A stretch of 64,000 nucleotides of DNA from IMG/VR virus record IMGVR_UViG_3300027541_000009, positions 186,001 to 250,000 of that record; one strand, given 5' to 3'. The translations under genes were made by a program, and so were the position numbers. This document shows positions 34,800-49,085 of the stretch, one piece after another. The notes under the pieces were generated by a model. That model was given only the letters and a program-made list of their open reading frames with translations. It had not been told where the DNA came from and ran no database searches. Position 1 is the first letter of the stretch, and each line of letters starts with the position of its first letter.

Positions 34800-35651
34800 A
34801 TGAACAAAACTTTTCTTAAATGGGCTGGCAATAAAACAAGAGTTCTGCCCCATCTTATTCCCCATATTGGTTATCCAAAGCGTTATTGTGAACCCTTTGG
34901 TGGTAGTCTTGCTGTTGCTTTGAATACACCAGCACAGCAATATATCCTCAACGATGTGAATAAGGATTTGGTAGCAATCTATCAGAATTTGGTAAATCCA
35001 AATGATGATAGTTTCATTCAATACTGCGAAGAACTATTCACGCCAGAGAATAATACAAGAGAAGTATATTTGGAGTTGCGAGAGCACTTCAATCAAGCAA
35101 CAGATACTACAGAGAGAGCAAGGTTATTCATTTATTTGAATAAGCACTGTTTTAATGGACTATCAAGATATAATAGCAAAGGAATGTTTAATGTTCCTTA
35201 TGGTAGAGAAGTTGTAAATAAGGATACTGGGGAGAAAGAAATACAAAGTGCTTACTTTCCCAGAGAGGAAATGATGAACTTCAGGATGTATTTCTTATCC
35301 AAACAATTGGTGAGGTTCACATCACTTTCTTTTGAAGATTCATCTCTGTATGAGGATTTGGAAGCAGGTGATGTTGTCTACTTTGACCCACCGTATGTTC
35401 CTGCATCAAATACTGCAAATTTCACAAGTTATGCGACTGATGGATTTACTTCTGACCAACAAGTTCAGTTAGCACAACTTGCAGAATCTCTTTCATCTAA
35501 AGGTATCAAAGTGATTGTATCAAATCACGATGTTCCTATTACAAGAGAACTCTACAAAAATGCTACAATCTATCAAATTCAAGTAACTAGAACGATTGCT
35601 GCAAAAGGCGGCAGTAGGAAAAAAGCAAGTGAACTCATAGCAGTTTACTAA
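34800..35651 (+). CDS. dam: DNA adenine methyltransferase (Dam/D12 class)
   Basis: LKWAGNK, YCEPFGGS, LNDVN, YLNKHCFNGL.RYN..G.FNVPYG, VVYFDPPY, SNHD motifs. Confidence 0.93.
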   Translation: MNKTFLKWAGNKTRVLPHLIPHIGYPKRYCEPFGGSLAVALNTPAQQYILNDVNKDLVAIYQNLVNPNDDSFIQYCEELFTPENNTREVYLELREHFNQATDTTERARLFIYLNKHCFNGLSRYNSKGMFNVPYGREVVNKDTGEKEIQSAYFPREEMMNFRMYFLSKQLVRFTSLSFEDSSLYEDLEAGDVVYFDPPYVPASNTANFTSYATDGFTSDQQVQLAQLAESLSSKGIKVIVSNHDVPITRELYKNATIYQIQVTRTIAAKGGSRKKASELIAVY

Positions 35652-35697
35652 CTTGGATCCTCTAAAGTGTACCTATAATGTAAGCAACAAACTTGAA

Positions 35698-36111
35698 ATG
35701 TCCACCCGAGCACGAATCGGTCTTGAACTTAAGAATGGTTCTATTCTCTCTGTGTATCACCACTGGGATGGTTATCCTGAATGGTTGGGTCGTATCCTGA
35801 ACACTCATTACAACACTCGTCAGAAAGTTGCTGACTTGATTGATGGTGGTGATATGTCTTGCTGCTGGACTGATGACCGCTGGAATGATAGTGCAGTGAA
35901 GGGTGTTTATGGACCCAACTATTATTCTTATCGTAACGATGATTGTCCTCCTCGTCTTGATGCTGATTTGTGTGAGTATCTTCTGCCTGCTAATGGTGAA
36001 GAGTATGCCTATGTCTTCCGCAACGGTGAATGGGTGTGCTACAATATGAATTGTTATGAACAAAAACTTCCTGAAGTGATTGAAATCCCCTCTGCTGCGC
36101 TTGCTGTTTAA
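35698..36111 (+). CDS. Hypothetical protein (MSTRARIG..SVYHHWDGYP family)
   Basis: Widespread phage family motif YxHWDGYP...EEYAY; follows repeat copy 1. Confidence 0.8.
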   Translation: MSTRARIGLELKNGSILSVYHHWDGYPEWLGRILNTHYNTRQKVADLIDGGDMSCCWTDDRWNDSAVKGVYGPNYYSYRNDDCPPRLDADLCEYLLPANGEEYAYVFRNGEWVCYNMNCYEQKLPEVIEIPSAALAV

Positions 36112-36128
36112 TTCTTAGGTAAATTATT

Positions 36129-36536
36129 ATGAAACAACAAAACGGATTTATTGACCCTGCTGTTGCTGCTATTGCTGTCGGTGTGGTTGTGATTGGTGGT
36201 CTCATCTTTATTGGTGGTCCACAATATAATGTGTGGCAGCAATCTCTTGCTGGTAAAGCAGAGTTGCAAAAAGCAGAATACACTCGTCAGGTAGCAGTTC
36301 TTGAAGCACAAGCAAAGAAAGATAGTGCTCAACAACTTGCTGATGCTGAAATCATCCGTGCTACTGGTGTTGCTAAGGCAAACCAAATCATTGGTGATAG
36401 TCTGAAGGACAACCGTGAGTATCTTCAGTATCTTTACATTACTGGTCTTGAAGAAGGATCTAACAAAGGTAATGTGACCATCTATGTTCCCACCGAAGGT
36501 GGTATGCCTGTTCCTACTCTTCAAATGAGCAAATGA
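36129..36536 (+). CDS. Membrane-anchored SPFH/HflK-like coiled-coil protein
   Basis: TM helix, then AEIIRA.GVAKANQIIGDSL...YLQYL..YVPTE.GMP. Confidence 0.7.
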   Translation: MKQQNGFIDPAVAAIAVGVVVIGGLIFIGGPQYNVWQQSLAGKAELQKAEYTRQVAVLEAQAKKDSAQQLADAEIIRATGVAKANQIIGDSLKDNREYLQYLYITGLEEGSNKGNVTIYVPTEGGMPVPTLQMSK

Positions 36537-37019
36537 ACAAAAAGTACATTGTTGTTGGATTGATTGGTTTTGCAGTTATTCTTGGTTGGAATGTCTTTCT
36601 AATCCAGCGTGATGACAAAATGTATGATGCTTACTATCGCTCTAAGGCAATAGAGAATCTCAAGAAACCACCCTCTATAGAAATCAGATGAGTATTGTAC
36701 TCGGTGTAGCAATCTACGCAGCACTGGTTGCATTTGTATCCTCCATTATGCTATATTACTTAAAGGTAATGTATTCACGCGAAGAAGCAAAACTTAAGGA
36801 GAAATCCAAATGATCCCCAAACGACTCCGTGACCTTATTAAACAAGCAGAAATGGACAAAGTAGCAGAAGAGTTCTGGAAAGAAGTTGAGCGTGAAGCAG
36901 CGAAACTTGAGGTAACTGTTGACTACTATCTCGCTGAGTTTTACTAATGACTTTTATTCTTGGTATGGGAATCGGTATTCTTTTGACTGTAGGAGTTTCT
37001 TTTATAGTTGCTTCCGACA

Positions 37020-37048
37020 TTGACAATAACGACAACTAATCTTAAACT
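37020..37048 (+). promoter_or_regulatory. sigma70-type promoter
   Basis: TTGACA-17 nt-TAAACT. Confidence 0.65.
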
Positions 37049-37071
37049 TAAGAGGTAATTTACAAAGACAA

Positions 37072-37314
37072 ATGGCACAAAAGTTTCTTTACATCGTTGA
37101 CCACTACATTCCTTTTCCGTCCAGTGAATACGGTGGACTTTGGAATGTGATTGCGGAAAACGACAATGAATGTTTTGATTTGATTTCTGCAGAAGATTCT
37201 GACAATTTTTATGAGCAACACTATACTACTCTTCGTGAAAATGTGTTAAGCGCGAGGACTTATGCGCTTGCTGAGGATGTAGAATCTGCAGTAGTTGAAT
37301 CTTTTACAACCTGA
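37072..37314 (+). CDS. Hypothetical protein (VDH.IPFPSSEYGG)
   Basis: 80 aa after promoter. Confidence 0.7.
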   Translation: MAQKFLYIVDHYIPFPSSEYGGLWNVIAENDNECFDLISAEDSDNFYEQHYTTLRENVLSARTYALAEDVESAVVESFTT

Positions 37315-37470
37315 TGACTCACCACGTTACTCACACCAATAAAATGGTGTTTGATTTGAAGAAACAGTACCAAGAACGTATTGAACAACTGCAAAGTAAA
37401 ATTGCAGAACAAGAACACGAAATCTCACAACTGCAGAAACAAATTGAGTATATGTCGCGTGACAAGTTCT

Positions 37471-37752
37471 ATGATTGCTGAGTTTCCGCATAAAGCACCC
37501 GAAAATTATTATTATGAGTTCGAAGAGTTCAAGCGTGGAGTTATTGCTATATGGTTGTATTGCAATCGTAAGTTTGATTACAATAATGGTGCTCCCACAA
37601 GGACAATCTGGGGATTCTACAAATCCAAGACCAGAGAATACTTTGCCCCAATCAATAGTAAGACAGTTGGTGCTCGTGTAAATATCAACGACACGCGAAA
37701 CTATTCAGCAATGCCTATCAAGCAGTCTCCATTGGATGCGTTCTTTGTATGA
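37471..37752 (+). CDS. Hypothetical protein
   Basis: ATGA-coupled start 37471. Confidence 0.7.
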   Translation: MIAEFPHKAPENYYYEFEEFKRGVIAIWLYCNRKFDYNNGAPTRTIWGFYKSKTREYFAPINSKTVGARVNINDTRNYSAMPIKQSPLDAFFV

Positions 37753-38012
37753 CATACAAACCACAAGTCAATGATTATGTTGAATGGACAAAAGGTGTTG
37801 AAGGTTGGGTTTATTTTAGGGATGACGAATATGTTACGATTGAGTATGTTGTTCGTCCTAAAGACCAAGTAAACTATCACGCCTGCCCCATTCACGCAAA
37901 TGAAAGATTGCTTGTTGTTTGTTATAAAGAAGATTGGAAACATTTAAAGTATGTTAAATCAAGAAAATCAAGATATGAAGAAGAACAGAACTGTCTGGCG
38001 ATTGCTTGCTAA
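37749..38012 (+). CDS. Hypothetical protein
   Basis: ATGA-coupled. Confidence 0.65.
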   Translation: MTYKPQVNDYVEWTKGVEGWVYFRDDEYVTIEYVVRPKDQVNYHACPIHANERLLVVCYKEDWKHLKYVKSRKSRYEEEQNCLAIAC

Positions 38013-38241
38013 GGCACTTGGAGAAAAAGCAAGTAAATGTGATAAAGAAGCGGATAAGGTAGCACTTATCCGCCTTTTGATGTTTTTGAGCATTTTTATT
38101 ACCAACTGCTTCATTATCGCTAATGCAATTCGACATTGGAATGATGAGACTAAGATAGAAGTATTTGTTGAAACTTCTAGTATGCCAGAATATCAAACTC
38201 CACCTATGAGAGTTGCAAATAAACCCCTTGAGTTTGAGTAA
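37975..38241 (+). CDS. Hypothetical membrane protein (WR..AKALGEK..IRHW)
   Basis: TM segment. Confidence 0.65.
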   Translation: MKKNRTVWRLLAKALGEKASKCDKEADKVALIRLLMFLSIFITNCFIIANAIRHWNDETKIEVFVETSSMPEYQTPPMRVANKPLEFE

Positions 38242-38270
38242 CAATAAATAACTAAAAAGTTATTCATAAG

Positions 38271-38915
38271 ATGGACGCTCAAGACATTCGCAATCTTCAA
38301 GAAGCATATATGGAAGTTGTTGAAAACCAGCAACTTGATGAGATGCCATATCAAGTAATGGGTTCTCCTGATGGAAAGAAAGAGAAGAAGATTGGTAAAC
38401 CAGTAAAGAGTAGAAAGTATGCTGACGCAAGAGCAGCAGAACTTGAAGATACTCATAAAAAAACAGGTGGCAAATATCGTTCACAATATGTTGAGGATTA
38501 TGACCTATACGACATCATTCTTTCGCACCTTCTTGATGAAGGATATGCTGATACTGAACAAGCAGCAACGGCAATTATGGGGAATATGAGTGAAGAGTGG
38601 AGAGAGAGTATTATGATTGCTGAAGGAATGACTATGAAGGACTTCAAGGCAAATCGTCAGAAGAATAAGAGGAGATCTGCTTCTGCTGATGCTGAGAAGA
38701 GAGGTCATGTAGGTAAGGAATGGTATAACAGTGGTAGAAGATATTCTCCAGATGAAGCAAAGAGAAGTCGTGCAAATATGGATGATGAAGAAAGACGCAC
38801 GAGACATCGTAGTGCTGTAGATCCTGATAATGAGGATGATAATAACTACTCTGCAGATAAGACGAAGAATCCTAAGAAACTTCGTAAGCAAAAAGCAATG
38901 GGAGAATTAGGATAA
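38271..38915 (+). CDS. Late, highly charged protein; candidate internal head protein
   Basis: ATAAATA promoter at about 38244; LQEAY and LDE prohead-protease-like sites. Confidence 0.65.
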   Translation: MDAQDIRNLQEAYMEVVENQQLDEMPYQVMGSPDGKKEKKIGKPVKSRKYADARAAELEDTHKKTGGKYRSQYVEDYDLYDIILSHLLDEGYADTEQAATAIMGNMSEEWRESIMIAEGMTMKDFKANRQKNKRRSASADAEKRGHVGKEWYNSGRRYSPDEAKRSRANMDDEERRTRHRSAVDPDNEDDNNYSADKTKNPKKLRKQKAMGELG

Positions 38916-38916
38916 A

Positions 38917-39165
38917 ATGCTAACATTTAGAGAGTTCTACGAAATCTGCGAAGCAAAAAGACCAGACACTCCACCTCAAGCAGTTCCTGGAACTTACAAG
39001 AGGAGTGATACTGGTGTGCAAACTTATACTCTTCAAAGATATGAAGGTCCAGAAGGGAAACCAACAAAGAAAGAAGTTAATAAGTTAATTGTAAAGCGTA
39101 GTGGCGGAAAAGAAGTAACAAAGAGACTGAAAAAGTTAGCAAAATCTGTTAAAAAAATTGATTGA
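38917..39165 (+). CDS. Candidate internal head protein
   Basis: MLTFREFYEICEA N-terminus resembling T4 capsid-targeting sequence; basic body. Confidence 0.6.
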   Translation: MLTFREFYEICEAKRPDTPPQAVPGTYKRSDTGVQTYTLQRYEGPEGKPTKKEVNKLIVKRSGGKEVTKRLKKLAKSVKKID

Positions 39166-39205
39166 TTTTTACTTGGATCCTCTAAAGTGTACCTATAATG
39201 TAAGC

Positions 39206-39352
39206 ATGAAACAAATTATGGACTGCTTCGATGACATTCAAATTGAAGAATCTAATGGATTTGATTTTATTGAAAAAGATCTAACTGAACTCATTGAAGA
39301 ATCTAACGACTTCAATCTTAATGAGTATCTTAACTCCAACTATGATTACTGA
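39206..39352 (+). CDS. Small acidic hypothetical protein
   Basis: Follows repeat copy 2. Confidence 0.55.
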   Translation: MKQIMDCFDDIQIEESNGFDFIEKDLTELIEESNDFNLNEYLNSNYDY

Positions 39353-39412
39353 CAGTTTCTAAACTGTCCACCAAATCACCCACACAGAACACTTTTCCTT
39401 TATTATTCTCAA

Positions 39413-39613
39413 ATGACTGAACACATCCCCAACGTGCTCCCTCACATTCAAGAACTGAAAGATGCTTGGCGTCGTCAAGATTTTATCTTTACTAAGCAGC
39501 AACAAGAAGAATATGATTTGCTTCTTGCTACTCGCCGCGAACGTGTAAAGCAATTCTATACTGAAGGACGAGTATTCAAGGGTTCATATAAAGCAAAGGA
39601 AGTAGAGTTCTAA
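39413..39613 (+). CDS. Hypothetical protein
   Basis: ATG just after class-2 -10. Confidence 0.7.
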   Translation: MTEHIPNVLPHIQELKDAWRRQDFIFTKQQQEEYDLLLATRRERVKQFYTEGRVFKGSYKAKEVEF

Positions 39614-39640
39614 ATACTAAAAAGTAGTGTTTAGATAACA

Positions 39641-40249
39641 ATGAAAACCTTTCAGGAGTTTATGTCTATTTGCGAAGAAGTTGATGACAAGTCAAAAGCA
39701 CTTGGATTCCAAGCAACAATCAGAAAAGCAAGACCTGGCGGTCGTATTGGTGCTGAACGCAAAAAGACAACTCCTGAAAAACGCCGTATGAAAGCAGTTG
39801 GCGGTGGTAAAATGGAACCAGCAAAAGAATACAAACCACGCAAGGATATTGGAAAACCAAAGGGTTCACAAATTCAACAACCAGAACAAGAGCGTGGATC
39901 TGCTAGAGAAAGACAACTGGCAGCAGCAAAAGAGGAAAGAAGAAAAGCAGCACAGGCAAGAATTGCTGCTAAGAAAGGTGGAGAATCACCAGCACCAGCA
40001 GCAGAAAAACCAAAAGCAAAAGAAGTAGTAAAAGCAGCAACTAAACTTCTTTCTAAGAAGAAAGCAACAGCAGAACCCGCTCCTGGATACAAACCACAAA
40101 AAGCATCTGGTCTAAGCAGACAAGAAAGATTGCATGTTACAAGAAAGGGAGAACAGAAACTCCGCGATCTTGTAATTGCAGGAGAAAGAGAAAGAGGTAA
40201 AAACATTAAGAGTGAGAAAGACCTCCAACACCGATACACTTCTCGCTGA
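39641..40249 (+). CDS. Candidate internal head protein (K/R/A-rich)
   Basis: CTAAATA late promoter at 39610; MKTFQEFMSICEE similar to T4 capsid-targeting MKTYQEFIAE. Confidence 0.7.
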   Translation: MKTFQEFMSICEEVDDKSKALGFQATIRKARPGGRIGAERKKTTPEKRRMKAVGGGKMEPAKEYKPRKDIGKPKGSQIQQPEQERGSARERQLAAAKEERRKAAQARIAAKKGGESPAPAAEKPKAKEVVKAATKLLSKKKATAEPAPGYKPQKASGLSRQERLHVTRKGEQKLRDLVIAGERERGKNIKSEKDLQHRYTSR

Positions 40250-40308
40250 TACTTACTTGGATCCTCTAAAGTGTCCCTATAGTATAAGCACTCAAACGAA
40301 ACAACATT

Positions 40309-40464
40309 ATGCTCTGGCAAGACCGCAACGGTAACTGGTTCAGCACTGTTTCTCCTATCGACATGAAAATTGAGCGAGCAATGATTGAAGCAAACGCTAA
40401 CAAAGTCTGGGAAGAAAAAGAGCGTTCTGGTGATTGGTTGTTTGATGAAATGTTTGGCGGTTGA
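40309..40464 (+). CDS. Hypothetical protein (51 aa)
   Basis: Read manually, between repeat copy 3 and a class-2 promoter. Confidence 0.6.
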   Translation: MLWQDRNGNWFSTVSPIDMKIERAMIEANANKVWEEKERSGDWLFDEMFGG

Positions 40465-40554
40465 TTAACTGTCCGCCAGCACCCTTTCCAAGCGTCAGGA
40501 AGGGTGCTATAATGTCTTTTAGATACCAAACCACCTGAAACTCTGTAATTCGTA

Positions 40555-41742
40555 ATGATTCCTCATCTGATCAATCTTCGTCCTCACCAAGAACGCGGAG
40601 TTGCTGCTATGCAACAGCATGATAAAGGTCAAGTCATTGTTCCTACTGGTGGTGGCAAGACTCTGAAGATGATCTATGATTGTCTGCGTGAGTTGCAGTC
40701 ACAAACTCCCCAGACCATTGTTGTTGTTGCTCCGCGTATTCTTCTGGCAGAGCAACTGTCTTCGGAGTTCCTGGAGTTTATCACTAACGCTGCTGTTTTC
40801 CATGTTCACAGTGGCGAAACTCATCACGAGTCTTCTACTCGCCCTCAAGAGATTCGCAACTGGGTTGATGCTAATGCCGACAATCATCGCCTGATTGTAA
40901 CCACCTACAACTCTCTGTCGCGTCTTCAAGTGGCAGAAGTTGATGTGGATACCATTTACTTTGACGAGGCACATAATTCTGTTCAGCGTCACTTTTTCCC
41001 TGCAACTGAGCACTTTGCTGCTAATGCACGCCGCTGCTACTTCTTCACTGCTACCAGGAAGACTTCGCTCACTCCTTCTAAACCTGGAATGAACGATCGT
41101 GATGTCTATGGAGATATTATTTGCCGCGTTTCTGCTCCTGAACTTGTTGATGGAGGATACATTATTGCTCCTAAGATTGTAGCGAAGAAGTTTGATGTAC
41201 TTGCACCAAAGCAGGTAACTGCTGAATGTGACAGTAGCAATCTGATGGACACTCTGGAGGATATTGATTGCAAGAAAATCCTGGTATGTGTTAAGTCTGC
41301 GAAGCAACTTATCAACCTGATGTCTCATACTGACTGTGCTTCCCAACTAAATCAGCGTGGTTATTCTTACCTCTACATCACCTCAAAAACTGGAGCGATT
41401 ATTGATGGTAAGAAAGTCAATCGTGAAGTATTCTTTGACACGCTCAATTCTTGGGGTCGTGACCCTAACAAGAAGTTTGTTTGCTTCCATCGCTCTATTT
41501 TGAGCGAAGGAATTAATGTCAGCGAACTAGAGGCGGTCGTCTTTCTTCGCAATATGGATGTGATTGAAATGACCCAAACTATTGGTCGGGTTCTTCGCCT
41601 TGGCGGCAAAGAAAAGGTCTTCGGTCTCTGTGTGGTGCCTGTATATTCCAAAGTTGGAGTATCTACAGAGCGAGCACTCCAGCGAGTTGTTGATGCTGTG
41701 TTTGAGAAGGGTGAGATGGTTGATAGTGTAGTGCGGCGGTGA
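40555..41742 (+). CDS. Superfamily 2 (DEAH; ResIII-like) helicase
   Basis: LRPHQ, PTGGGKT, VVAPRILL.EQ, FDEAH, FTAT, LSEGIN, QTIGRVLR. Confidence 0.9.
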   Translation: MIPHLINLRPHQERGVAAMQQHDKGQVIVPTGGGKTLKMIYDCLRELQSQTPQTIVVVAPRILLAEQLSSEFLEFITNAAVFHVHSGETHHESSTRPQEIRNWVDANADNHRLIVTTYNSLSRLQVAEVDVDTIYFDEAHNSVQRHFFPATEHFAANARRCYFFTATRKTSLTPSKPGMNDRDVYGDIICRVSAPELVDGGYIIAPKIVAKKFDVLAPKQVTAECDSSNLMDTLEDIDCKKILVCVKSAKQLINLMSHTDCASQLNQRGYSYLYITSKTGAIIDGKKVNREVFFDTLNSWGRDPNKKFVCFHRSILSEGINVSELEAVVFLRNMDVIEMTQTIGRVLRLGGKEKVFGLCVVPVYSKVGVSTERALQRVVDAVFEKGEMVDSVVRR

Positions 41743-41855
41743 GTCTCGCCTAAGAACCCAGTCACAGTCAGGGGTCAAAACCTGATTTTTCTTCAATTCT
41801 ACTGCAGCGGTGTCATAGGTCATCCACTGCAACCAAATTCCTGATTTTTACTAAA
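41743..41855. repeat. Copy 1 of duplicated ~110-bp intergenic element
   Basis: 38-bp identical core (41786-41823) with 47971-48008, similar flanks. Confidence 0.85.
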
Positions 41856-41869
41856 GTATAGATTTTACC

Positions 41870-42565
41870 ATGGATTTCGTTGAGTTCGTTCCTGCTTACA
41901 ACCGAATTAAAGCAAAAGGTTTCATAAAGTCTCATCGCAAAGGTGATACTGGAGTTGGTCATACTTTTGAACAAGAACTTGGTTTGACTGAGAATTGTAT
42001 CTCTGGTCCAGATATTGATGGAAAAGAGTTGAAAGCAGCAAGGAAAGGTGCTGGTGGAAAACAAACTCTCTTTACAAAGGAAGGTGAATGGCAGATACCT
42101 CAATTAAAGTTCCTAGAAACTTTTGGATTTCCTCACACAAAACACATTGGGGAATTGTCTGGACAATCTACTGTGACAAGAACCAAAAACAACAGAGGAT
42201 TTTGGATTCATACTGATGATGAATATGTTTCCATAAAGCACGAAGAACTGGAGATTGTTAGGTGGGATTGGGATTCACTTATTAAACAGTTTGCTCACAA
42301 ATTTCCATCTTGTGTTAAAGTATTTGCCGATGTTGAAGTTCGTAATGGTATAGAGTATTTTCACTACAATGAAGCGTATGTCTACATTTCTATTGATAAA
42401 AATCTGTTTCGTAAGGCAATCGAAGATGATGTAATTTCTATTGACTTACGACTGAGAACCCAGTATAATGTTGGCACTGGTAAGGGTGTTCGCAATCGTG
42501 GCACTTGCTTTCGTATAAATCACTCAAATATGGATAAATTGTTTGTAAAAGAGGTTCTTGAATGA
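41870..42565 (+). CDS. MvaI/BcnI-family restriction endonuclease
   Basis: GDTGVGHTFEQELGL.EN....PD..G.ELKA..TLFTK and C-terminal IDLR....RNRGT.FRI. Confidence 0.8.
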   Translation: MDFVEFVPAYNRIKAKGFIKSHRKGDTGVGHTFEQELGLTENCISGPDIDGKELKAARKGAGGKQTLFTKEGEWQIPQLKFLETFGFPHTKHIGELSGQSTVTRTKNNRGFWIHTDDEYVSIKHEELEIVRWDWDSLIKQFAHKFPSCVKVFADVEVRNGIEYFHYNEAYVYISIDKNLFRKAIEDDVISIDLRLRTQYNVGTGKGVRNRGTCFRINHSNMDKLFVKEVLE

Positions 42566-43425
42566 AGGATGTTATTCTTTATGGTGACTGCCGCTCAACT
42601 CTTAAACATTTTGTAGACGCTGGTGTAAAAGCACAAATGTGTGTGACCTCTCCACCATACTACGGTCTGCGTGATTACGGTAACGAAGATAATCAAATTG
42701 GTTTAGAAGAGTCGCCTGAAGAGTTTATCTCCCAACTGGTAGAGGTGTTTCGCGGTGTGCGTGATGTTCTTACAGATGATGGCACATTGTGGGTTAACAT
42801 TGGTGATTCTTATTACAACTATCGTTCTGGTAAAGGTCAGACACTACCTAAGCAATCTGTGGCATCTAACAACCAAGATTTGCCACAAATACGAAATCCT
42901 AGAAGAGGAAATAAACTTGAGGGTCTAAAGGATAAAGATTTGATTGGTATTCCTTGGATGCTAGCATTTGCTTTGCGTGCAGATGGTTGGTATCTACGAC
43001 AGGATATTATTTGGAGCAAACCAAATCCAATGCCCGAAAGTATGAAAGATCGATGTACCAAATCTCACGAATATATCTTCCTCTTATCTAAGAGCAAGAA
43101 CTATTATTTTGATGTTGATTCGATTAAAGAACCCACTGTAGATGGCAAGGAATTAAAACGGAAACGTAGTGTATGGGAAGTAACAACTAAACCATACAAA
43201 GGTTCTCACTTTGCAGTTTATCCTCCAGAACTTATTGAACCTTGTATTATTGCTGGTTCTCGTGAAGGTGACACTATTCTTGACCCATTTATGGGTAGTG
43301 GGACTACTGCTGCTGTTGCCAAATCTTTGGGAAGGAATTATGTTGGATGCGAACTTCACGAGGAGTATGGTAAATTGATTGAAAAGAGAGTTAGTGAAAC
43401 TGTTGGTCTTACCAAGTTTATGTAA
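42562..43425 (+). CDS. N4-cytosine/N6-adenine DNA methyltransferase (beta class)
   Basis: VTSPPY catalytic motif before DPFMGSGTT SAM motif; ATGA overlap with the endonuclease. Confidence 0.92.
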   Translation: MKDVILYGDCRSTLKHFVDAGVKAQMCVTSPPYYGLRDYGNEDNQIGLEESPEEFISQLVEVFRGVRDVLTDDGTLWVNIGDSYYNYRSGKGQTLPKQSVASNNQDLPQIRNPRRGNKLEGLKDKDLIGIPWMLAFALRADGWYLRQDIIWSKPNPMPESMKDRCTKSHEYIFLLSKSKNYYFDVDSIKEPTVDGKELKRKRSVWEVTTKPYKGSHFAVYPPELIEPCIIAGSREGDTILDPFMGSGTTAAVAKSLGRNYVGCELHEEYGKLIEKRVSETVGLTKFM

Positions 43426-43427
43426 CG

Positions 43428-43607
43428 ATGAAAGAAGGATTTACAATGTTCAAGGATACATATGCTGCAATTCCGTTTGGGAATCAGTATCTTATCATTC
43501 ACAATGGTCAGCAACTTGAGAAAGTTTGTAGGACCGAAAGTTCTGCGCGAAAGTATATCACAGACCACAAAAAAGGTAAGTCAATGGCAAAACTTCCAGT
43601 GAATTAA
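43428..43607 (+). CDS. Hypothetical protein (59 aa)
   Basis: Read manually; stop abuts repeat copy 4. Confidence 0.6.
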   Translation: MKEGFTMFKDTYAAIPFGNQYLIIHNGQQLEKVCRTESSARKYITDHKKGKSMAKLPVN

Positions 43608-43654
43608 ACTTGGATCCTCTAAAGTGTACCTATAGTGTAAGACGCATTTACCCT

Positions 43655-43897
43655 ATGCCTCGCGCTCGCAAGCAAACTGCTAATGTCTCTGTTGCTCCCG
43701 AAGTGTCCGTCCCACAGGTACTGATTACTCGTGAACAATACTTCCAAGACATTCAGGTTCGCTGGCAAATCCATCAGTATGAAGTCAACAAACTTCGTGA
43801 AGATGTGGTGAAGTTCACTCAAACTGTTTCGCCTTATGTGAAGCAAGTATTGAACTTTATTGAACAACAAATATCTGCCCGTCGTGTGGCAGTATAA
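43655..43897 (+). CDS. Hypothetical protein
   Basis: After repeat copy 4. Confidence 0.65.
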   Translation: MPRARKQTANVSVAPEVSVPQVLITREQYFQDIQVRWQIHQYEVNKLREDVVKFTQTVSPYVKQVLNFIEQQISARRVAV

Positions 43898-43965
43898 AAA
43901 CTGACACAGGAGCACTTGCAATTTAGCAAGTGCTCCTTTATTGTACCTTTGTTCGTAAAACTTCA

Positions 43966-44169
43966 ATGATTTTCCTCACTGTTCCTGGTCACGGTTGCGT
44001 CTATACTCTGTCGCAAGAAGATGGAGATGAGTTATATTATTCTCCCATTATGCAAAATGGCACTGTAGATCTTGAAGCGTTTGCTCCCGTAGGTCTTGAT
44101 GATGTAGATATGGATGAAATGGAACTCTTTGATATTCGCAATCGTCTTGCTAAACTGATGCAAGTTTGA
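43966..44169 (+). CDS. Hypothetical protein
   Basis: After class-2 promoter. Confidence 0.6.
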   Translation: MIFLTVPGHGCVYTLSQEDGDELYYSPIMQNGTVDLEAFAPVGLDDVDMDEMELFDIRNRLAKLMQV

Positions 44170-44207
44170 TTGATTGAAACTTGGATCCTCGAAAGTGTAC
44201 CTATAGT

Positions 44208-45125
44208 ATGAGTAAGCAACCAATGCAAAATAAGCACCTTGAGCACCCTGAAGATGAAATCCTGACGGGTAATCTATCTGTTCTTGATTGGTTCTCTGAG
44301 GTTGATAGTTTTATCAGCGTCAAGATGGATGGTGCTCCTGCTATTGTTTGGGGCACTAATCCTGAGAATGGTAAGTTTTTTGTCTGCACCAAAGCAGCAT
44401 TTAACAAGCAAAAGATTCGCCTTTGCTATAACGAAGATGACATCTTTACTCATTTTGGTGGACAACCAAGGGTAGCACAAATCCTCATCTTCTGTCTGGA
44501 TTATCTTCCTCGCACTAACAATGTGTATCAGGGAGATTGGATTGGTTTCGGTAAAGGGTTGGATACATTCACGCCCAACACGATTACCTATCGTTTTCCT
44601 GAAGTTGTGCGTCAAGAGATTATCGTTGCTCCACATACTTACTACACTGGTGAGCGTCTGCCTGAAATGGTAGCACATCCTATCACTAGCAAGTTTGCAA
44701 GCACAAAGAAATGTTTGTTTGTGCAACCTGCTGTGTCGCTGAATCCTTATCGTGAAGATTTGGAGGATGTGTGTAACTTTGCTAAACAAATGAGCACTCT
44801 GTGTGAGTTTGTGAGCGACAAGAAAGCATCACAAATCAAAAAAGAGATTAACGCTTGCATCCGAGAGCAACGCACCATCCGTGAGGATGAAATTGCAGAA
44901 AAATGCGATTGTGACATCAACCTCATCAGATTGTGGAAGTTGGTGAAGTCTATCAAGGATGATTTGTTCCTGTTCATTCATGAAGAGGATGACATTGAAT
45001 GTTTCCTCTGGGATGTTGCAGGTTTCCACGAGGGTTATGTCATTCATAACAAGTTTGGGTCTTACAAAGTAGTTGATCGTGAGGTATTCTCTCATGCCAA
45101 CTTCACAATCGCAAAGAGTTGGTAA
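44208..45125 (+). CDS. KxDG-motif (ligase/nucleotidyltransferase-like) phage protein
   Basis: N.HLEHPED, SVKMDGAPAIVWG, YQGD, EGYV, YKVVDR..FS..NF; resembles covalent nucleotidyltransferase motifs I, IV and V. Confidence 0.6.
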   Translation: MSKQPMQNKHLEHPEDEILTGNLSVLDWFSEVDSFISVKMDGAPAIVWGTNPENGKFFVCTKAAFNKQKIRLCYNEDDIFTHFGGQPRVAQILIFCLDYLPRTNNVYQGDWIGFGKGLDTFTPNTITYRFPEVVRQEIIVAPHTYYTGERLPEMVAHPITSKFASTKKCLFVQPAVSLNPYREDLEDVCNFAKQMSTLCEFVSDKKASQIKKEINACIREQRTIREDEIAEKCDCDINLIRLWKLVKSIKDDLFLFIHEEDDIECFLWDVAGFHEGYVIHNKFGSYKVVDREVFSHANFTIAKSW

Positions 45126-45153
45126 CTTGGATCCTCGAAAGTGTACCTATAGT

Positions 45154-45585
45154 ATGAGCACTCCTACGATGCAAGCACAAGCACAACAAACTATTGCAGA
45201 GAATGTGTATAAGAACACTCTGCTGCTGATTGAAGCACTGAAAGACAACTATCGTCAGTATTCTATTCGCGGTCACCAAAAGTTCGTGAATGATGCTGAT
45301 AATCAAGAGTATCATCAGCGCAAGATTGATGAACTCAAGTCTGGCAAGTGTGACATTGATTATACTGTTGAGACTGGCAAAAAGTATCACAAAGTCATTC
45401 TGGTGAATGGTGGTGGATCGAGATCGGTTCACTGTTTTATCGACAAGCAAAATGGAGGCGTTTTCAAGTCAGCGTCGTGGCGTAGTCCTGCAAAGGGTGA
45501 GCGATACAATCTCTTGTTAATTAAGGACCGTGAATGGTTGTTTGAGAACGCAGATTGGTCGTCCGGATATCTTTACAAAAGGTGA
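45154..45585 (+). CDS. Hypothetical protein (GKKY.K..SVHCFID..G.V.K.ASW..PAK family)
   Basis: ATG supplied by repeat copy 6. Confidence 0.75.
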   Translation: MSTPTMQAQAQQTIAENVYKNTLLLIEALKDNYRQYSIRGHQKFVNDADNQEYHQRKIDELKSGKCDIDYTVETGKKYHKVILVNGGGSRSVHCFIDKQNGGVFKSASWRSPAKGERYNLLLIKDREWLFENADWSSGYLYKR

Positions 45586-46074
45586 TTATTGCAAATAGTA
45601 ACCTTTGGACTTTTTCCCTTTATAAAGGTCTCCCCTATCAATTTTATGTTCTCTACAAAACTTTCCAAGATTAAAAACTTCTACTATTTCTCCAGTTGGT
45701 GTTACTAACCGATGAACTTTTGCTAATGCCAACTCCGTGTTTTTTTGATTACTGCACCACTCAAGATTACTGACATTGTTGTTTGTTTTTACGCCATCAA
45801 TGTGATTAACTTGAGGGAGATTATTTGGATTTGGAATGTAAGTTTCTGCGACCAAACGATGAACTTTTTTTAACTTCTGTCCTTCTTCCGTTTTAATCCA
45901 AACAGTCAAGTATCCCTTGCAATGATTATTAAATCTTCTTTTTTTTGGTTCTTTATCCAATACTACTCCCCACCCATCTCTTCCACGATTGCGCCAGTAT
46001 GACCAAACTTCACCGTTTTCTGTGATAAAATAACCTTTATGTTCTGGGTGTTCTTTCATCTTTAATACCTGCAT
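45586..46074 (-). CDS. HNH homing endonuclease
   Basis: VHRLVAETYIPNPNNLPQVNHIDGVKTNNNVSNLEW; minus-strand TATAAATA at about 46085-46092. Confidence 0.9.
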   Translation of the reverse strand: MQVLKMKEHPEHKGYFITENGEVWSYWRNRGRDGWGVVLDKEPKKRRFNNHCKGYLTVWIKTEEGQKLKKVHRLVAETYIPNPNNLPQVNHIDGVKTNNNVSNLEWCSNQKNTELALAKVHRLVTPTGEIVEVFNLGKFCREHKIDRGDLYKGKKSKGYYLQ

Positions 46075-46109
46075 ACTGTGTTATTATTTATAACCTATCT
46101 GTACGCAAA

Positions 46110-46334
46110 ATGAACTACCTTTGTTTTGTTGATGGTTTGCTAGAATACGCTAGTTCAGACCCTTCTTCTTTCGCTCACTATCAGTTAGTGTATGCTGAAG
46201 AGCACAAAAATGCTAATGTTCAGTATCTTACTCTGACTGACGAAGAGTATGACGAAATGTTCCCTTATGAGGAGGATGAACAACCTTACCTTGATGGTTG
46301 GGAAGATTCGATTTTTGATGGAAATGAAGAATGA
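46110..46334 (+). CDS. Hypothetical acidic protein
   Basis: 74 aa. Confidence 0.65.
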   Translation: MNYLCFVDGLLEYASSDPSSFAHYQLVYAEEHKNANVQYLTLTDEEYDEMFPYEEDEQPYLDGWEDSIFDGNEE

Positions 46335-46588
46335 GCACAATCCCTGACACTGAAATGACTTATGATGAACAAATCAAAGAAATGACTGTCACAAAGTCTC
46401 TCAAACTTTTGCGTGATGGGTTCAAGAACGAACTTGCCACTGCTCTATTCGCAGATGAGCGCACAACTGAACTCTTTGCCCAACTGATTAGTGAGTTTGT
46501 AGAGACAAACATTCCTGTGGTTGATGATGAGAACCAGATGGAACTTTCTATGATGCTGTTGGAAACTCTTGACATTGTAGCACGATGA
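46331..46588 (+). CDS. Hypothetical protein
   Basis: ATGA-coupled. Confidence 0.65.
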   Translation: MSTIPDTEMTYDEQIKEMTVTKSLKLLRDGFKNELATALFADERTTELFAQLISEFVETNIPVVDDENQMELSMMLLETLDIVAR

Positions 46589-46839
46589 CTTACTCTAACC
46601 TTTCAAAGATTCGCCCCAAACTTCGCACACAAGGAAACATTACAGGCAACTTCGGAAAACCCAAATCTAAGGGAGGTTCTACACTCAATGACATCGGTGG
46701 TAATGGTAACATAGGTGCGACACAGAATGAATACTTGAATCGTCTCTATTATGCTTTTGATAACACTACCGACTCTAAACTTCGTCACTTCATTTATACT
46801 GAAATCAAAAAGATTCTCATTCAACAAGGAAAGTGGTGA
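46585..46839 (+). CDS. Hypothetical protein
   Basis: ATGA-coupled. Confidence 0.7.
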   Translation: MTYSNLSKIRPKLRTQGNITGNFGKPKSKGGSTLNDIGGNGNIGATQNEYLNRLYYAFDNTTDSKLRHFIYTEIKKILIQQGKW

Positions 46840-46877
46840 GTGATTCTTACTTGGATCCTCTAAAGTGTACCTATAGT

Positions 46878-47120
46878 ATGAGCACAACCACTGAAATGGA
46901 TCAAGTCTTTCACTATGTCACCAACTGGAAAGAAGGTAAGGTGATGCAAATGTTCATTCAACAAATCACCCCTGAGTATCAAGAATGTGACCACAAATAT
47001 GTTGCTATTGCTCTCAATCCTGTAACTAACAAGAGCATGGTAATGTCTAATCCTCGCAGTCATTATGATACTCTCCAGTGGGTTCGTAAGTTCTGTGGTT
47101 CTTTCTCTCTTCTGTACTGA
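46878..47120 (+). CDS. Hypothetical protein
   Basis: ATG supplied by repeat copy 7. Confidence 0.65.
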   Translation: MSTTTEMDQVFHYVTNWKEGKVMQMFIQQITPEYQECDHKYVAIALNPVTNKSMVMSNPRSHYDTLQWVRKFCGSFSLLY

Positions 47121-47292
47121 TTATGAACAACTATCGACTCTTGATTGAGTATAAAGTCCCCAACAGTGCAGAGACTTACTATGAAGAAAGGTTCATCAAG
47201 TCTCGTTCATCTTGTGGTAAAATCGCTGATGATTACCTAGCACAAGACCGCACAAATCTTATCCGCTCTGTTGAAGTTACCCCTGTTTAATT

Positions 47293-47562
47293 ATGTACCG
47301 CACTCTTTCTGAACTTCGTGACTCTATCAACCAAATGATTGAGAGTCAAGGTGAGAACGCTCCCTGTGCTGCGTTTGTATTCACTCAACACGATGTCGTT
47401 GAGTTTGATGGTGAGGACAATCAAGAGAAGTATTTTTCTTCTCTTTTCACTCAAGATGTGCTCGCTGATGTAGGCGGTTCCGACTACATTTACGAACAGA
47501 TTGGTGAGGTGATTGATGATTCAATCCGTGACCGTAAGCAAATGTCCATCTACGCTAACTGA
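47293..47562 (+). CDS. Hypothetical protein
   Basis: 89 aa. Confidence 0.7.
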   Translation: MYRTLSELRDSINQMIESQGENAPCAAFVFTQHDVVEFDGEDNQEKYFSSLFTQDVLADVGGSDYIYEQIGEVIDDSIRDRKQMSIYAN

Positions 47563-47722
47563 TTATGACTAACAAAACACAACTTTTTGAGTTTCTGTAT
47601 GAAACTTGCAAAAAGAATAATGGTGTCTTAGAAGATACTTTGCGTAACTACATTGACTCCTTAGATGAGGTGGAACTTTGCGAACTTGAGGATTTTCTTG
47701 TCAACAACTTTGGAGATGATTG

Positions 47723-47917
47723 ATGACTGACGGTTACACTTTCAATCGCGTTAATTTTACTCCTAATGAGGAAAGTTGTATTCTTAAGTTTCTCAATCAA
47801 GCACGAGAATGTGGGTATCCTAGTGCAAACGAAGAATGGTATCCTGTGATCGATTCTATCTTCCAAAAATTCTTTAACTCTAACTTGAAAGAGGCACAAG
47901 AGTGGCAAACCCTGTGA
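47723..47917 (+). CDS. Hypothetical protein
   Basis: TGATG-coupled. Confidence 0.6.
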   Translation: MTDGYTFNRVNFTPNEESCILKFLNQARECGYPSANEEWYPVIDSIFQKFFNSNLKEAQEWQTL

Positions 47918-47928
47918 TTCTCACTTGT

Positions 47929-48041
47929 GTCTCACTGAGAACCCAGTCCACCACTGAAGCAAAAACCTGTTTTTTCTTCAATTCTACTGCAGCGGTGTCA
48001 TAGGTCATTCACTGCAGGGAAATCCTCAATTTTTTCTAAAA
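47929..48041. repeat. Copy 2 of duplicated ~110-bp intergenic element
   Basis: See copy 1 at 41743. Confidence 0.85.
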
Positions 48042-48054
48042 TACAAACAAACAC

Positions 48055-48198
48055 ATGAAGTACATCGTTGAACTCTACGTTGGTGGCAAAGTCTTCAAAG
48101 AAGAAGTGCAAGCAACCAACCCAAAAGATGCCCGTGAGACTGCACTGGCACGAAATCCTCACGCAAAAGTTGTTGCGGTCAATGTAAGTTTTCGTTGA
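48055..48198 (+). CDS. Hypothetical protein (MKYIVELYVGGKVF..A.NP.A family)
   Basis: 47 aa, read manually; its TGA lies in the left extension of repeat copy 8. Confidence 0.65.
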   Translation: MKYIVELYVGGKVFKEEVQATNPKDARETALARNPHAKVVAVNVSFR

Positions 48199-48232
48199 TT
48201 CTAACTTGGATCCTCTAAAGTGTACCTATAGT

Positions 48233-48403
48233 ATGAGCAACACTTTCACCGTCCGTTTCGTATCCGATGCTCTGGATTCTCCCGAGTATATTGGACCTTT
48301 CTACACTGAAGATGACGCCCAAGACTATTGCGATGCCCGCAACGGTTCGCTATCACTTTCTGGGATTCCTTCCTGGGTTGCCTGTTACTCTGTCGTTGAC
48401 TGA
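48233..48403 (+). CDS. Hypothetical protein (YIGPF motif)
   Basis: Only in-frame ATG is at the repeat's right edge. Confidence 0.6.
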   Translation: MSNTFTVRFVSDALDSPEYIGPFYTEDDAQDYCDARNGSLSLSGIPSWVACYSVVD

Positions 48404-48540
48404 TTAGTAATGCGAATTGCTTTCCTGATTGCTACTATTGCACTTGGTTTTAAAGTTGCAATTCCTGCTTATGCGACGGTGAATGAGTATCAAGAACGCC
48501 AAGCAGATCAGTTCTGCCAAATTGACCCTAACTACTGCAA

Positions 48541-48783: not shown

Positions 48784-48809
48784 TTTCCCTCCCTAACTTC
48801 ACAAACAAA

Positions 48810-49034: not shown

Positions 49035-49085
49035 TAGCAACTTGGATCCTCTAAAGTGTACCTATAGTATCACCGCAATTCCACA

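What the first reader, a model, noticed from the sequence alone, without database searches (positions are those of the whole stretch)
40555..43425. Lytic phage carrying an apparently complete type II-like restriction-modification pair behind an SF2 helicase
Seen in sequence: an MvaI/BcnI-family nuclease is translationally coupled (ATGA) to an SPPY-type MTase, downstream of a ResIII-like helicase. Established: MvaI and BcnI cut CCWGG and CCSGG and pair with m4C MTases; orphan MTases are common in cyanophages but coupled REase-MTase pairs are less so. CCWGG and CCSGG sites do occur in this window, so protection would be needed if that specificity holds. Inference: used for host DNA degradation or exclusion of co-infecting phages.
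Basis: partly seen in the sequence, partly recalled or inferred. Interest (0 to 1): 0.6.

Follow-up and report, generated by a model that had tools for sequence, protein, structure and literature searches.

The report
Mobile restriction-modification cassette in a cyanophage
A T4-like virus of marine cyanobacteria carries an apparently working pair of genes, a DNA-cutting enzyme and the methylase that shields the virus's own DNA, which moves between virus genomes as a unit and is probably used against unmethylated DNA of the host and of rival viruses.

Summary
Window 41870-42565 encodes an MvaI/BcnI-family endonuclease. Its stop overlaps (ATGA) the start of a beta-class SPPY methyltransferase at 42562-43425, and an SF2 helicase lies upstream at 40555-41742.

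The nuclease looks active:
- All four MvaI catalytic residues are invariant in 121 homologues.
- The model matches MvaI-DNA (TM 0.81).
- dN/dS is 0.08-0.19.

Residues that read the central base pair resemble MvaI rather than BcnI, so CCWGG is the likelier site. This is inferred, not shown.

The two genes are adjacent with an NTGA overlap in all 35 related loci examined.

The helicase is not part of the system. It is a conserved cyanomyovirus gene found in 419 phage records, and its 80 closest relatives lack both genes.

Compared with the nearest relatives, the pair is an exact 1.57 kb two-gene indel. Elsewhere it sits in at least five other contexts, for example between uvsX and gp41.

The methyltransferase belongs to a cyanophage family that is mostly orphan. 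The nuclease forms a phage-only clade and is present in only one of 50,697 GenBank phage records, though it is common in marine metagenomes.

Verdict: a real type IIP R-M cassette that is mobile among cyanomyoviruses, and a new member of a known kind. Its biological role is untested.

The parts
40256..40285 (+). Copy of a 30-nt promoter-like repeat that opens the transcription unit holding the helicase and the R-M pair
   Evidence: The repeat has 14 copies, all on the + strand, with 0 expected by chance. The next copy downstream is at 43609.
40555..41742 (+). SF2 helicase. It is the left neighbour and a conserved cyanomyovirus gene, not part of the R-M system
   Evidence: Pfam ResIII/DEAD/Helicase_C and phrog_16. 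Found in 419 cyanophage records. The 80 nearest relatives lack R and M.
41766..41787 (+). Weak terminator-like hairpin after the helicase
   Evidence: Consensus scan: 7-pair stem followed by a T run. Function not shown.
41861..43427 (.). Two-gene cassette: an indel relative to the nearest relatives
   Evidence: Homology with L188-L191 stops at window 41738-41860 and resumes at 43428-43494.
41870..42565 (+). MvaI/BcnI-family type IIP restriction endonuclease (231 aa)
   Evidence: PF15515 6.7e-39. PDB MvaI 6.5e-15 and BcnI 4e-9. Catalytic residues E34/D48/E53/K55 are invariant in 121 homologues. Model pLDDT 92.4, TM 0.81 to 2oaa. dN/dS 0.08-0.19.
42441..42469 (+). Candidate internal sigma-70-type promoter (TTGACT-17-TATAAT) for the methylase, inside the nuclease gene
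   Evidence: 11 of 12 consensus match. Both hexamers are identical in 8 of 19 distinct loci with nuclease identity from 41% to 100% (7 excluding the window's near-identical copy L005). Neighbouring synonymous sites vary, and the rare Asp codon GAC is kept.
42562..42565 (+). ATGA stop/start overlap
   Evidence: Read directly. The position is conserved as NTGA in all paired loci.
42562..43425 (+). Beta-class SPPY DNA methyltransferase, predicted N4-cytosine (287 aa)
   Evidence: PF01555 4.1e-57. PADLOC MTase_II 1.5e-108. Motif IV lies before motif I. It is the only N6_N4 methylase in the record.
43428..43607 (+). 59-aa ORF. It is the right flank, conserved in relatives that lack the cassette
   Evidence: Synteny with L188-L191. 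No family hit.
43609..43638 (+). Next copy of the 30-nt promoter-like repeat, marking the end of the unit

Best explanation
Window 41861-43427 is a two-gene type IIP restriction-modification cassette in a lytic T4-like cyanophage.

The first gene encodes a monomeric PD-(D/E)XK endonuclease of the MvaI/BcnI family. It most likely recognises a CCWGG-type site and cuts the two strands one after the other. The second gene encodes a beta-class SPPY methyltransferase that most likely makes N4-methylcytosine in the same site.

Inferred mechanism:
- The packaged genome arrives already methylated from the previous cycle, so no delay of the nuclease is needed. This fits the fixed R-before-M order and the lack of a controller gene.
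- The pair is transcribed within an early-type unit that starts upstream of the helicase.
- The methylase is translated by coupling to the nuclease and probably also from its own promoter inside the nuclease gene, so replicating phage DNA stays protected.
- Any unmethylated target DNA in the cell is cut, both the host chromosome and co-infecting phages that lack this methylase.

The cassette is an accessory, mobile unit that is gained and lost among cyanomyoviruses. Its distribution suggests it persists mainly as a competitive or selfish element, with host DNA cleavage as a side benefit. The upstream helicase is only a neighbour.
For: Shown:
- Family membership, fold and catalytic residues.
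- Purifying selection on both genes.
- R-M adjacency with an NTGA overlap in 35 of 35 loci, across nuclease identity of 41-100%.
- An exact two-gene indel against the nearest relatives.
- At least six insertion contexts. One identical nuclease protein occurs in two of them.
- An empty uvsX|gp41 junction in this genome, which is filled by the cassette elsewhere.
- 173 CCWGG sites in the genome that would need protection.
- SPPY in all 83 methylases but one orphan. SPPY is reported as the N4-cytosine hallmark, and R.MvaI is blocked by N4mC (PMC2532716).
- The residues MvaI uses for the central W pair are conserved (R194 = MvaI R209; T69 and C213 where BcnI has H77 and H219).

Inferred:
- The site.
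- m4C as the modification.
- Timing of expression.
- The targets in the cell.
Against: - No biochemical or methylome data exist. The cut site and the methylated site are predicted only from residues.
- The two outer-G contacts differ from MvaI (H223 and H225 are Arg here).
- k-mer statistics give no site-specific signal. CCWGG is depleted in methylase-carrying loci, not relaxed, and the comparison is confounded by lineage.
- No strong promoter lies directly before the nuclease, and a hairpin precedes it, so its expression level is unknown.
- The record is only about 78% complete, so 'no integrase' is not proof of a strictly lytic life style.
Confidence: 0.75

Rival explanations
1. The molecular system is the same, but its selected role is host-chromosome degradation for nucleotide recycling and host shut-off, as in chloroviruses. 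Competition or selfish spread would be secondary.
For: - R-before-M order with no controller, inside an early-type unit.
- The genome is self-protected while 173 own sites exist.
- Chlorovirus R-M enzymes are reported to degrade host DNA (PMC7253447).
- An active nuclease would unavoidably cut unmethylated host sites.
Against: - Distribution is patchy even among the closest relatives.
- The cassette has many insertion sites, and the R and M histories are decoupled.
- A generally useful scavenging function would be expected to be fixed.
- In marseilleviruses a similar pair did not degrade host DNA.
Confidence: 0.3
2. The pair is a working R-M system but its site is not CCWGG. It could be CCSGG, CCNGG or a different sequence.
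For: - Identity to MvaI and BcnI is only 23-26%.
- Two MvaI guanine contacts are replaced: H223 and H225 are Arg.
- The MvaI minor-groove residue N28 is Asp here.
- The methylase is unrelated in architecture to the partners of most cellular homologues.
Against: - MvaI T68, D207, R209 and R230 equivalents are nearly invariant.
- The two histidines that BcnI uses for the central S pair are absent in all but one (the H77 position) and in all (the H219 position) of the 121 homologues.
Confidence: 0.35
3. The nuclease is a strand-specific nickase with a MutH-like role in phage replication, recombination or repair, directed by methylation state rather than acting as a restriction enzyme.
For: - The family is structurally related to MutH (weak MutH hits).
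- Single substitutions turn BcnI into a nickase.
- One insertion site lies inside the recombination/replication module, between uvsX and gp41.
Against: - The fold and recognition lobe match MvaI and BcnI (TM 0.8), not MutH (TM 0.4).
- The gene is accessory and mobile, not core.
- It is always tied to a methylase, as an R-M pair would be.
Confidence: 0.07
4. Helicase, nuclease and methylase form one three-component, ATP-dependent (type I/III-like) restriction system.
For: Adjacency in the window and in L001 and L021. The helicase matches the ResIII Pfam family.
Against: - The helicase occurs in 419 cyanophage records without the nuclease.
- Its 80 closest relatives lack R and M.
- The cassette sits elsewhere in most loci.
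- A hairpin and a 127-nt gap separate them here.
- MvaI-family enzymes need no ATPase (PMC1874612).
Confidence: 0.03
5. The nuclease is a decaying remnant and only the methylase, acting in anti-restriction, is functional.
For: - Orphan versions of the methylase dominate.
- The nuclease lacks a strong promoter of its own.
Against: - The frame is intact.
- The catalytic tetrad is invariant in 121 homologues.
- dN/dS is 0.08-0.19, similar to the methylase.
- No truncated copies were seen in 35 loci.
Confidence: 0.05

Closest known systems
MvaI R-M system (Kocuria varians; CC/WGG, m4C) and R.BcnI (CC/SGG)
   Same: - Same Pfam family and same two-lobed fold.
- Same E-D-E-K active site.
- MvaI-type residues at the central base-pair contacts.
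- The partner methylase carries the SPPY motif that M.MvaI also has.
   Different: - Only 23-26% identity, and two guanine contacts are changed.
- The partner is a 287-aa methylase with motif IV before motif I.
- Most cellular homologues of the nuclease sit next to methylases of about 410-430 aa with motif I first.
- The carrier is a lytic phage, and there is no controller protein.
Chlorovirus R-M systems (e.g. CviAI) and Marseilleviridae R-M pairs
   Same: - Virus-encoded, adjacent, type II pairs of prokaryotic type.
- Under purifying selection and present in only some lineages.
- Related viruses carry orphan methylases proposed as self-defence.
- In melbournevirus the nuclease is expressed before the methylase (PMC7253447).
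   Different: - Those are eukaryotic giant viruses with other enzyme families (GATC and others).
- Here the carrier is a T4-like bacteriophage and the cassette moves among several genomic sites.
Free-standing homing endonuclease genes of T4-like phages (Seg/Mob type)
   Same: - Presence/absence polymorphism.
- Seamless insertion between conserved genes, such as uvsX|gp41 and helicase|next ORF.
- GIY-YIG and HNH genes lie nearby in the same window.
   Different: - It is a restriction enzyme with a short, frequent site, and it needs a methylase for self-immunity.
- No evidence was obtained that it cuts the empty site or drives its own copying.
Orphan DNA methyltransferases of cyanomyoviruses ('T4-like GC 38', annotated dam or cytosine methyltransferase in P-SSM2, P-SSM4, P-SSM7, S-SSM5, P-HM1 and others)
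   Same: Same family: 64-72% identity over the full length, the same TSPPYY and FxGSGT motifs, and often the same place next to the helicase.
   Different: - Those have no nuclease upstream.
- In the methylase tree the paired ones fall in three places, not one clade.
Annotated 'restriction endonuclease II' plus methylase of Prochlorococcus phage P-SSM4 (PSSM4_046/047)
   Same: An adjacent R-M-like pair in a cultured cyanomyovirus, in the same neighbourhood next to the GC 38 methylase and the helicase.
   Different: An unrelated nuclease family. It has no PF15515 match and no similarity to P0002, and it has its own PHROG.

Membership tests
MvaI/BcnI restriction endonuclease family (PF15515) | Profile match above the curated cut-off over the full length | tested here: met
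   134.7 bits against a cut-off of 25, residues 11-225 of 231. PDB MvaI 6.5e-15 and BcnI 4.2e-9.
MvaI/BcnI restriction endonuclease family (PF15515) | Catalytic residues Glu36, Asp50, Glu55 and Lys57 of MvaI | tested here: met
   E34, D48, E53 and K55 align to them. They are invariant in 121 homologues.
MvaI/BcnI restriction endonuclease family (PF15515) | Two-lobed fold (catalytic plus recognition lobe) that clamps DNA | tested here: met
   AlphaFold model with pLDDT 92.4. Foldseek TM 0.81 to MvaI-DNA (2oaa) and 0.80 to BcnI-DNA (2odi). The next unrelated hits have E above 0.03.
MvaI/BcnI restriction endonuclease family (PF15515) | Recognition of CCWGG or CCSGG with cleavage after the second C, acting as a monomer | not testable with these tools
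   Only residue mapping was possible. MvaI T68, D207, R209 and R230 are conserved. H223 and H225 are Arg. BcnI H77 and H219 are absent. This points to CCWGG but does not prove it.
Type II restriction-modification system | Adjacent nuclease and methylase genes whose linkage is conserved in relatives | tested here: met
   35 of 35 loci have the pair with an NTGA overlap, down to 41% nuclease identity.
Type II restriction-modification system | Methylase and nuclease act on the same site, and methylation blocks cleavage | not testable with these tools
   Needs cloning plus cleavage and protection assays, or a methylome.
Beta-class N4-cytosine DNA methyltransferase | N6_N4_Mtase fold with motif IV before motif I, and SPPY rather than DPPY in motif IV | tested here: met
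   PF01555 4.1e-57. TSPPYY at 29-34 and FMGSGT at 243-248. SPPY is described as unique to N4C enzymes in PMC2532716.
Beta-class N4-cytosine DNA methyltransferase | Product is N4-methylcytosine | not testable with these tools
   Needs SMRT or nanopore data, or chemistry.
M.MvaI-type partner methylase | Same architecture as the methylases that accompany cellular MvaI-family nucleases | tested here: not met
   Seven of 10 sampled bacterial and archaeal partners are 406-432 aa. In the 4 of them with an N6_N4 match, its motif-I part lies at the N-terminus. Only 2 of 80 genome loci have the P0003 type, and both are marine MAG contigs that look like phage. M.MvaI itself was not available for comparison.
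Type I/III (helicase-dependent) restriction system | The helicase subunit co-occurs with the modification and nuclease functions | tested here: not met
   The helicase is in 419 cyanophage records without the nuclease. Its 80 nearest relatives lack R and M. The cassette is found at other sites.
Mobile (homing-like) phage gene cassette | Filled and empty versions of the same site between conserved genes | tested here: met
   Helicase|59-aa-ORF site: filled here, empty or with other cargo in L188-L191. uvsX|gp41 site: empty here, filled in L010-12, L034-36 and L184-185.
Mobile (homing-like) phage gene cassette | The nuclease cuts genomes lacking the cassette and is copied into them by repair | not testable with these tools
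   Needs mixed-infection experiments.

The most novel reading that the evidence does not exclude
The nuclease is a weapon in phage-against-phage conflict among marine T4-like cyanophages. On this reading, the widespread 'orphan' SPPY methylase of cultured cyanomyoviruses (P-SSM2, P-SSM4, P-SSM7, S-SSM5 and others) is the matching immunity. The nuclease gene would spread like a homing element by landing next to, or travelling with, that methylase.

This would explain:
- why the orphan methylase is so common;
- why the R and M histories are decoupled;
- why the same cassette appears at several junctions between core genes.
Probability: 0.3. Interest if true: 0.75.

Novelty: new member of a known kind. 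Interest (0 to 1): 0.5.

Why it matters
Complete restriction-modification pairs are well known in bacteria and in a few giant viruses, but are rarely noted in lytic T4-like phages.

This cassette has at least 90 protein clusters in marine metagenomes, some on contigs of about 195 kb. Yet it appears in only one unannotated GenBank phage record, and no paper in the searched library links MvaI with cyanophages.

If active, it gives cyanophages a way to tell their own DNA from other DNA by methylation, much as T4 does with hydroxymethylcytosine. It also offers a concrete function for the abundant 'orphan' cyanophage methylase, and it adds a virus-against-virus layer to the ecology of Prochlorococcus and Synechococcus.

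It is directly testable with cultured phages that carry the orphan methylase. It may also yield a new MvaI-type enzyme.

Tried and rejected
1. Helicase as part of the system: rejected.

2. Inferring the site from k-mer avoidance: inconclusive.
- CCWGG Markov O/E is 0.71 in this genome.
- It is 0.43 in paired loci, 0.40 in orphan-methylase loci and 0.80 in methylase-less helicase loci.
- The control word GGWCC is just as low in the orphan set, and CCGG is almost absent there. The contrast therefore reflects lineage or host, not this enzyme.

4. First genome-collection scan with a broad nuclease alignment failed for lack of a conserved stretch. It was repeated with a narrower alignment.

5. Gp23 family search in the genome found nothing, but the control genomes were silent too, so it says nothing. 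T4-like identity rests on polB-uvsX-gp41 instead.

6. P-SSM4 'restriction endonuclease II' as a relative of this nuclease: rejected, no similarity.

7. A single origin of pairing in the methylase tree: rejected. At least 3-4 changes are needed.

8. A controller (C) protein: none fits in the 127-nt gap, and the downstream 59-aa ORF belongs to the flank.

9. The large representative-protein search and the complex prediction were not used, because no claim here needed them.

10. No alternative genetic code was used.
Full report
**What is there**

The window is part of a 204,829 bp IMG/VR virus record.
- 40555-41742, 395 aa
- 41870-42565, 231 aa
- 42562-43425, 287 aa

Pfam assigns them as follows:
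- ResIII/DEAD/Helicase_C for the first.
- MvaI_BcnI for the second (6.7e-39, 134.7 bits against a cut-off of 25).
- N6_N4_Mtase for the third (4.1e-57).

PHROGs and PADLOC agree: DNA helicase phrog_16, REase_II models, and MTase_II at 1.5e-108.

The nuclease stop and the methylase start overlap as ATGA. The methylase has TSPPYY near its N-terminus and FMGSGT near its C-terminus, which is the beta-class motif order.

The carrier is a T4-like cyanophage:
- polB, uvsX and gp41 are contiguous.
- Two photosystem reaction-centre genes are present.
- The helicase and tail-fibre genes match Synechococcus and Prochlorococcus myoviruses.
- No integrase was found, but the record is only about 78% complete.

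The window has 38 CCWGG and 16 CCSGG sites, and the record has 173 and 69.

**Is the nuclease real and active?**

- Against solved structures the only sequence hits are R.MvaI (6.5e-15) and R.BcnI (4.2e-9).
- The MvaI paper names Glu36, Asp50, Glu55 and Lys57 as the active site (PMC1874612). In the HMMER alignment these are E34, D48, E53 and K55 here.
- All four are invariant in 121 homologues.
- An AlphaFold model built on 22 homologues has mean pLDDT 92.4.
- It superposes on the DNA-bound forms of MvaI (TM 0.81) and BcnI (TM 0.80). Nothing unrelated comes near.
- Between diverged copies, dN/dS is 0.08-0.19 for the nuclease and 0.04-0.10 for the methylase. Several pairs are close to synonymous saturation, so these values are rough.
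- No truncated or frameshifted copy was seen in any locus.

**Which site?**

MvaI reads the central T:A pair with Arg209. It reads the flanking G:C pairs with Thr68, Asp207, His223, His225 and Arg230. BcnI reads the central C:G pair with His77 and His219.

Here the equivalents are as follows:
- T66, D192, R194 and R215 are conserved and almost invariant in the family set.
- The two BcnI histidine positions are Thr or Asn, and Ala or Cys, as in MvaI.
- The two MvaI histidines are Arg.

This favours a CCWGG-type site over CCSGG. At 23-26% identity it is a prediction, which I put at about 0.55-0.6.

SPPY in motif IV is described as the mark of N4-cytosine methyltransferases, and R.MvaI is blocked by N4mC at either cytosine of CCWGG (PMC2532716). 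An m4C methylase would therefore be a fitting partner.

**Linkage**

They are not.
- Loci fetched through the nuclease, through the methylase, or by exact protein look-up all show the nuclease directly followed by the methylase.
- The stop and start overlap at the same position. It is ATGA here and TTGA or GTGA in most others.
- This holds in 35 of 35 loci, down to 41% nuclease identity.

**The helicase is a neighbour only**

- Its relatives occur in 419 GenBank phage records, all cyanophages.
- It is one of the gene clusters present in 14 of 16 cyanomyoviruses in the comparative study PMC3037559.
- Only one of those records also has the nuclease.
- The 80 closest helicase relatives in IMG/VR (61-93% identity) carry neither the nuclease nor this methylase type nearby.

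**A mobile two-gene cassette**

Nucleotide homology with the four nearest relatives runs through the helicase and its downstream spacer to window 41738-41860. It resumes at 43428-43494, the first base after the methylase stop. The pair is therefore an exact indel of about 1.57 kb.

At the same slot the relatives have nothing (194 nt) or unrelated ORFs of 170, 188 or 335 aa with no family match.

Elsewhere the same cassette lies in these contexts:
- between uvsX and gp41, a junction that is empty in this genome;
- in an island of 2OG-Fe(II) oxygenases and small ORFs;
- after CP12;
- after a Mom-family gene;
- after an Eco57I-like gene, where the nuclease protein is identical to one found at the uvsX|gp41 site.

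**Two gene families with different histories**

The methylase belongs to a cyanophage family:
- It has at least 591 IMG/VR relatives.
- About 39 GenBank cyanophage records carry it at 64-72% identity, where it is orphan and annotated either as dam or as cytosine methyltransferase.
- In S-SSM5 and several metagenomic loci it follows the helicase directly, with no nuclease between.
- All 83 distinct copies but one orphan, paired or orphan, keep TSPPYY, and all keep FxGSGT. Conservation is even along the whole length.

In a methylase tree the paired copies fall in three places:
- a main clade (13 paired, 1 orphan; support 97);
- a second clade (support 99);
- one isolated copy inside an orphan clade.

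At least 3-4 gains or losses are needed.

Pairs of loci can have nearly identical methylases but very different nucleases. Examples are pN 0.03 against 0.31, and 0.10 against 0.38.

The nucleases from phage loci nevertheless form one supported set (99), apart from about 100 cellular homologues.

In 185,579 species genomes the nuclease family has 334 hits scattered over bacteria and archaea:
- Their partner methylases are mostly about 410-430 aa with motif I first, a different architecture.
- Only two marine MAG contigs carry the phage type, and they look like mis-binned phage DNA.

So this is an MvaI-type nuclease teamed with a phage-typical methylase, not a transplanted MvaI system.

**Regulation (partly inferred)**

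- A 30-nt repeat occurs 14 times on the + strand of the window, with 0 expected by chance. It looks like a phage promoter element.
- One copy precedes the helicase unit (40256) and the next follows the 59-aa ORF after the methylase (43609). None lies directly before the nuclease.
- A weak hairpin follows the helicase.
- Inside the nuclease gene, 93 nt before the methylase start, lies TTGACT-17-TATAAT.
- Both hexamers are identical in 8 of 19 distinct loci (7 excluding the window's near-identical copy L005), with nuclease identity from 41% to 100%.
- The surrounding synonymous positions differ, and the rare GAC codon is kept.

This suggests the methylase can be made independently of the nuclease as well as by translational coupling. 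No controller protein is present. That fits a phage whose incoming DNA is already methylated.

**Role**

An active nuclease would cut every unmethylated target in the infected cell. Two roles are proposed for virus-encoded R-M systems:
- host DNA recycling in chloroviruses;
- exclusion of competing viruses in marseilleviruses, where orphan methylases are read as self-defence (PMC7253447).

The patchy, mobile distribution here and the abundance of the orphan methylase in related phages fit the second role better. Homing endonuclease genes also lie in the same region: HNH at 45586-46074 and GIY-YIG at 51992-53005, both on the - strand. Nothing here tests either role.

**What did not work**

- Word statistics could not identify the site.

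**Prior knowledge**

- No paper in the searched library mentions both MvaI and cyanophage.
- Searches for cyanophage restriction enzymes or m4C found only general statements about methylases.
- P-SSM4 has an annotated but unrelated 'restriction endonuclease II' plus methylase in the same neighbourhood. R-M-like pairs in cyanomyoviruses are therefore not wholly unseen at the annotation level.

**Verdict**

The feature is real and well supported as a type IIP R-M cassette. The helicase link is coincidental. The site and the role are inferred. It is a new member of a known kind, of moderate interest. The phage-against-phage reading would be considerably more interesting if experiments bear it out.

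Noticed in passing
window 35652-53800 (14 copies, e.g. 40256-40285, 43609-43638, 44180-44209, 46850-46879): A 30-nt repeat (consensus CTTGGATCCTCTAAAGTGTACCTATAGTAT) occurs 14 times, always on the + strand, mostly in front of small ORFs, with 0 expected by chance. It is probably a phage early-promoter element. The same motif recurs in the related loci L190 and L191.
   Followed up: partly
window 34800-35651 (+): A second DNA methyltransferase of the D12 (Dam) class (PF02086, 6.3e-60). The phage therefore carries both an adenine-type and a cytosine-type methylase.
   Followed up: no
window 45586-46074 (-) and 51992-53005 (-): HNH (PF13392) and GIY-YIG/SegE-like (PF01541) endonuclease genes on the strand opposite to their neighbours. 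They are typical free-standing homing endonucleases, lying a few kb from the R-M cassette.
   Followed up: no
window 33479-34093 (+): A 204-aa protein with a C-terminal MazE/AbrB-type antitoxin-like domain (PF04014, 4e-6).
   Followed up: no
whole record G000: GGCC is strongly avoided, with 23 sites in 205 kb (Markov O/E 0.27, zero-order 0.10). GATC and CTAG are at about half of expectation. This suggests pressure from other restriction systems.
   Followed up: partly
orphan-methylase loci (subset of L017-L100), 322 kb pooled: CCGG is almost absent, with 1 site in 322 kb (Markov O/E 0.01), and CCSGG with it. Helicase-anchored loci of the window's own lineage keep CCGG at O/E 0.38. This is a striking lineage-specific avoidance and is unexplained.
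   Followed up: partly
L019 1359-3004 (P-SSM4) and L020 4445-4990 (P-TIM68): - P-SSM4 has an annotated 'restriction endonuclease II' plus methylase directly upstream of its copy of this methylase family.
- P-TIM68 gp050, next to its copy, gives a weak PvuII-endonuclease match (E 0.002, below cut-off).
- The methylase/helicase neighbourhood looks like a hot spot for R-M-like genes.
   Followed up: partly
L009 5297-5956; L186 1799-3307: - A Mom-family DNA-modification gene (PF25680, 1e-21) lies directly upstream of the nuclease in one relative.
- An Eco57I-family gene lies upstream in another.
   Followed up: no
L189 2973-3539; L190 11206-11718; L191 10120-11127: The slot that holds the R-M cassette in the window carries unrelated ORFs of 188, 170 and 335 aa in the nearest relatives. 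None has a Pfam or PHROG match. These are alternative cargo of unknown function.
   Followed up: partly
L101 (MAG labelled Rhodopirellula) and L102 (MAG labelled Euryarchaeota TMED129): These MAG contigs carry the phage-type nuclease plus methylase with the same 4-nt overlap. They are probably cyanophage contigs binned into cellular MAGs.
   Followed up: no
L004 (IMG/VR contig of 284,050 bp): A 284 kb contig holds an identical helicase, nuclease and methylase. With the CheckV estimate of 78% completeness for the 205 kb record, the phage genome may be about 260-285 kb, which is large for a cyanomyovirus.
   Followed up: no
window about 2718-2807: This stretch matches tRNA-Leu genes of several Synechococcus phages at 85-91% identity.
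   Followed up: no
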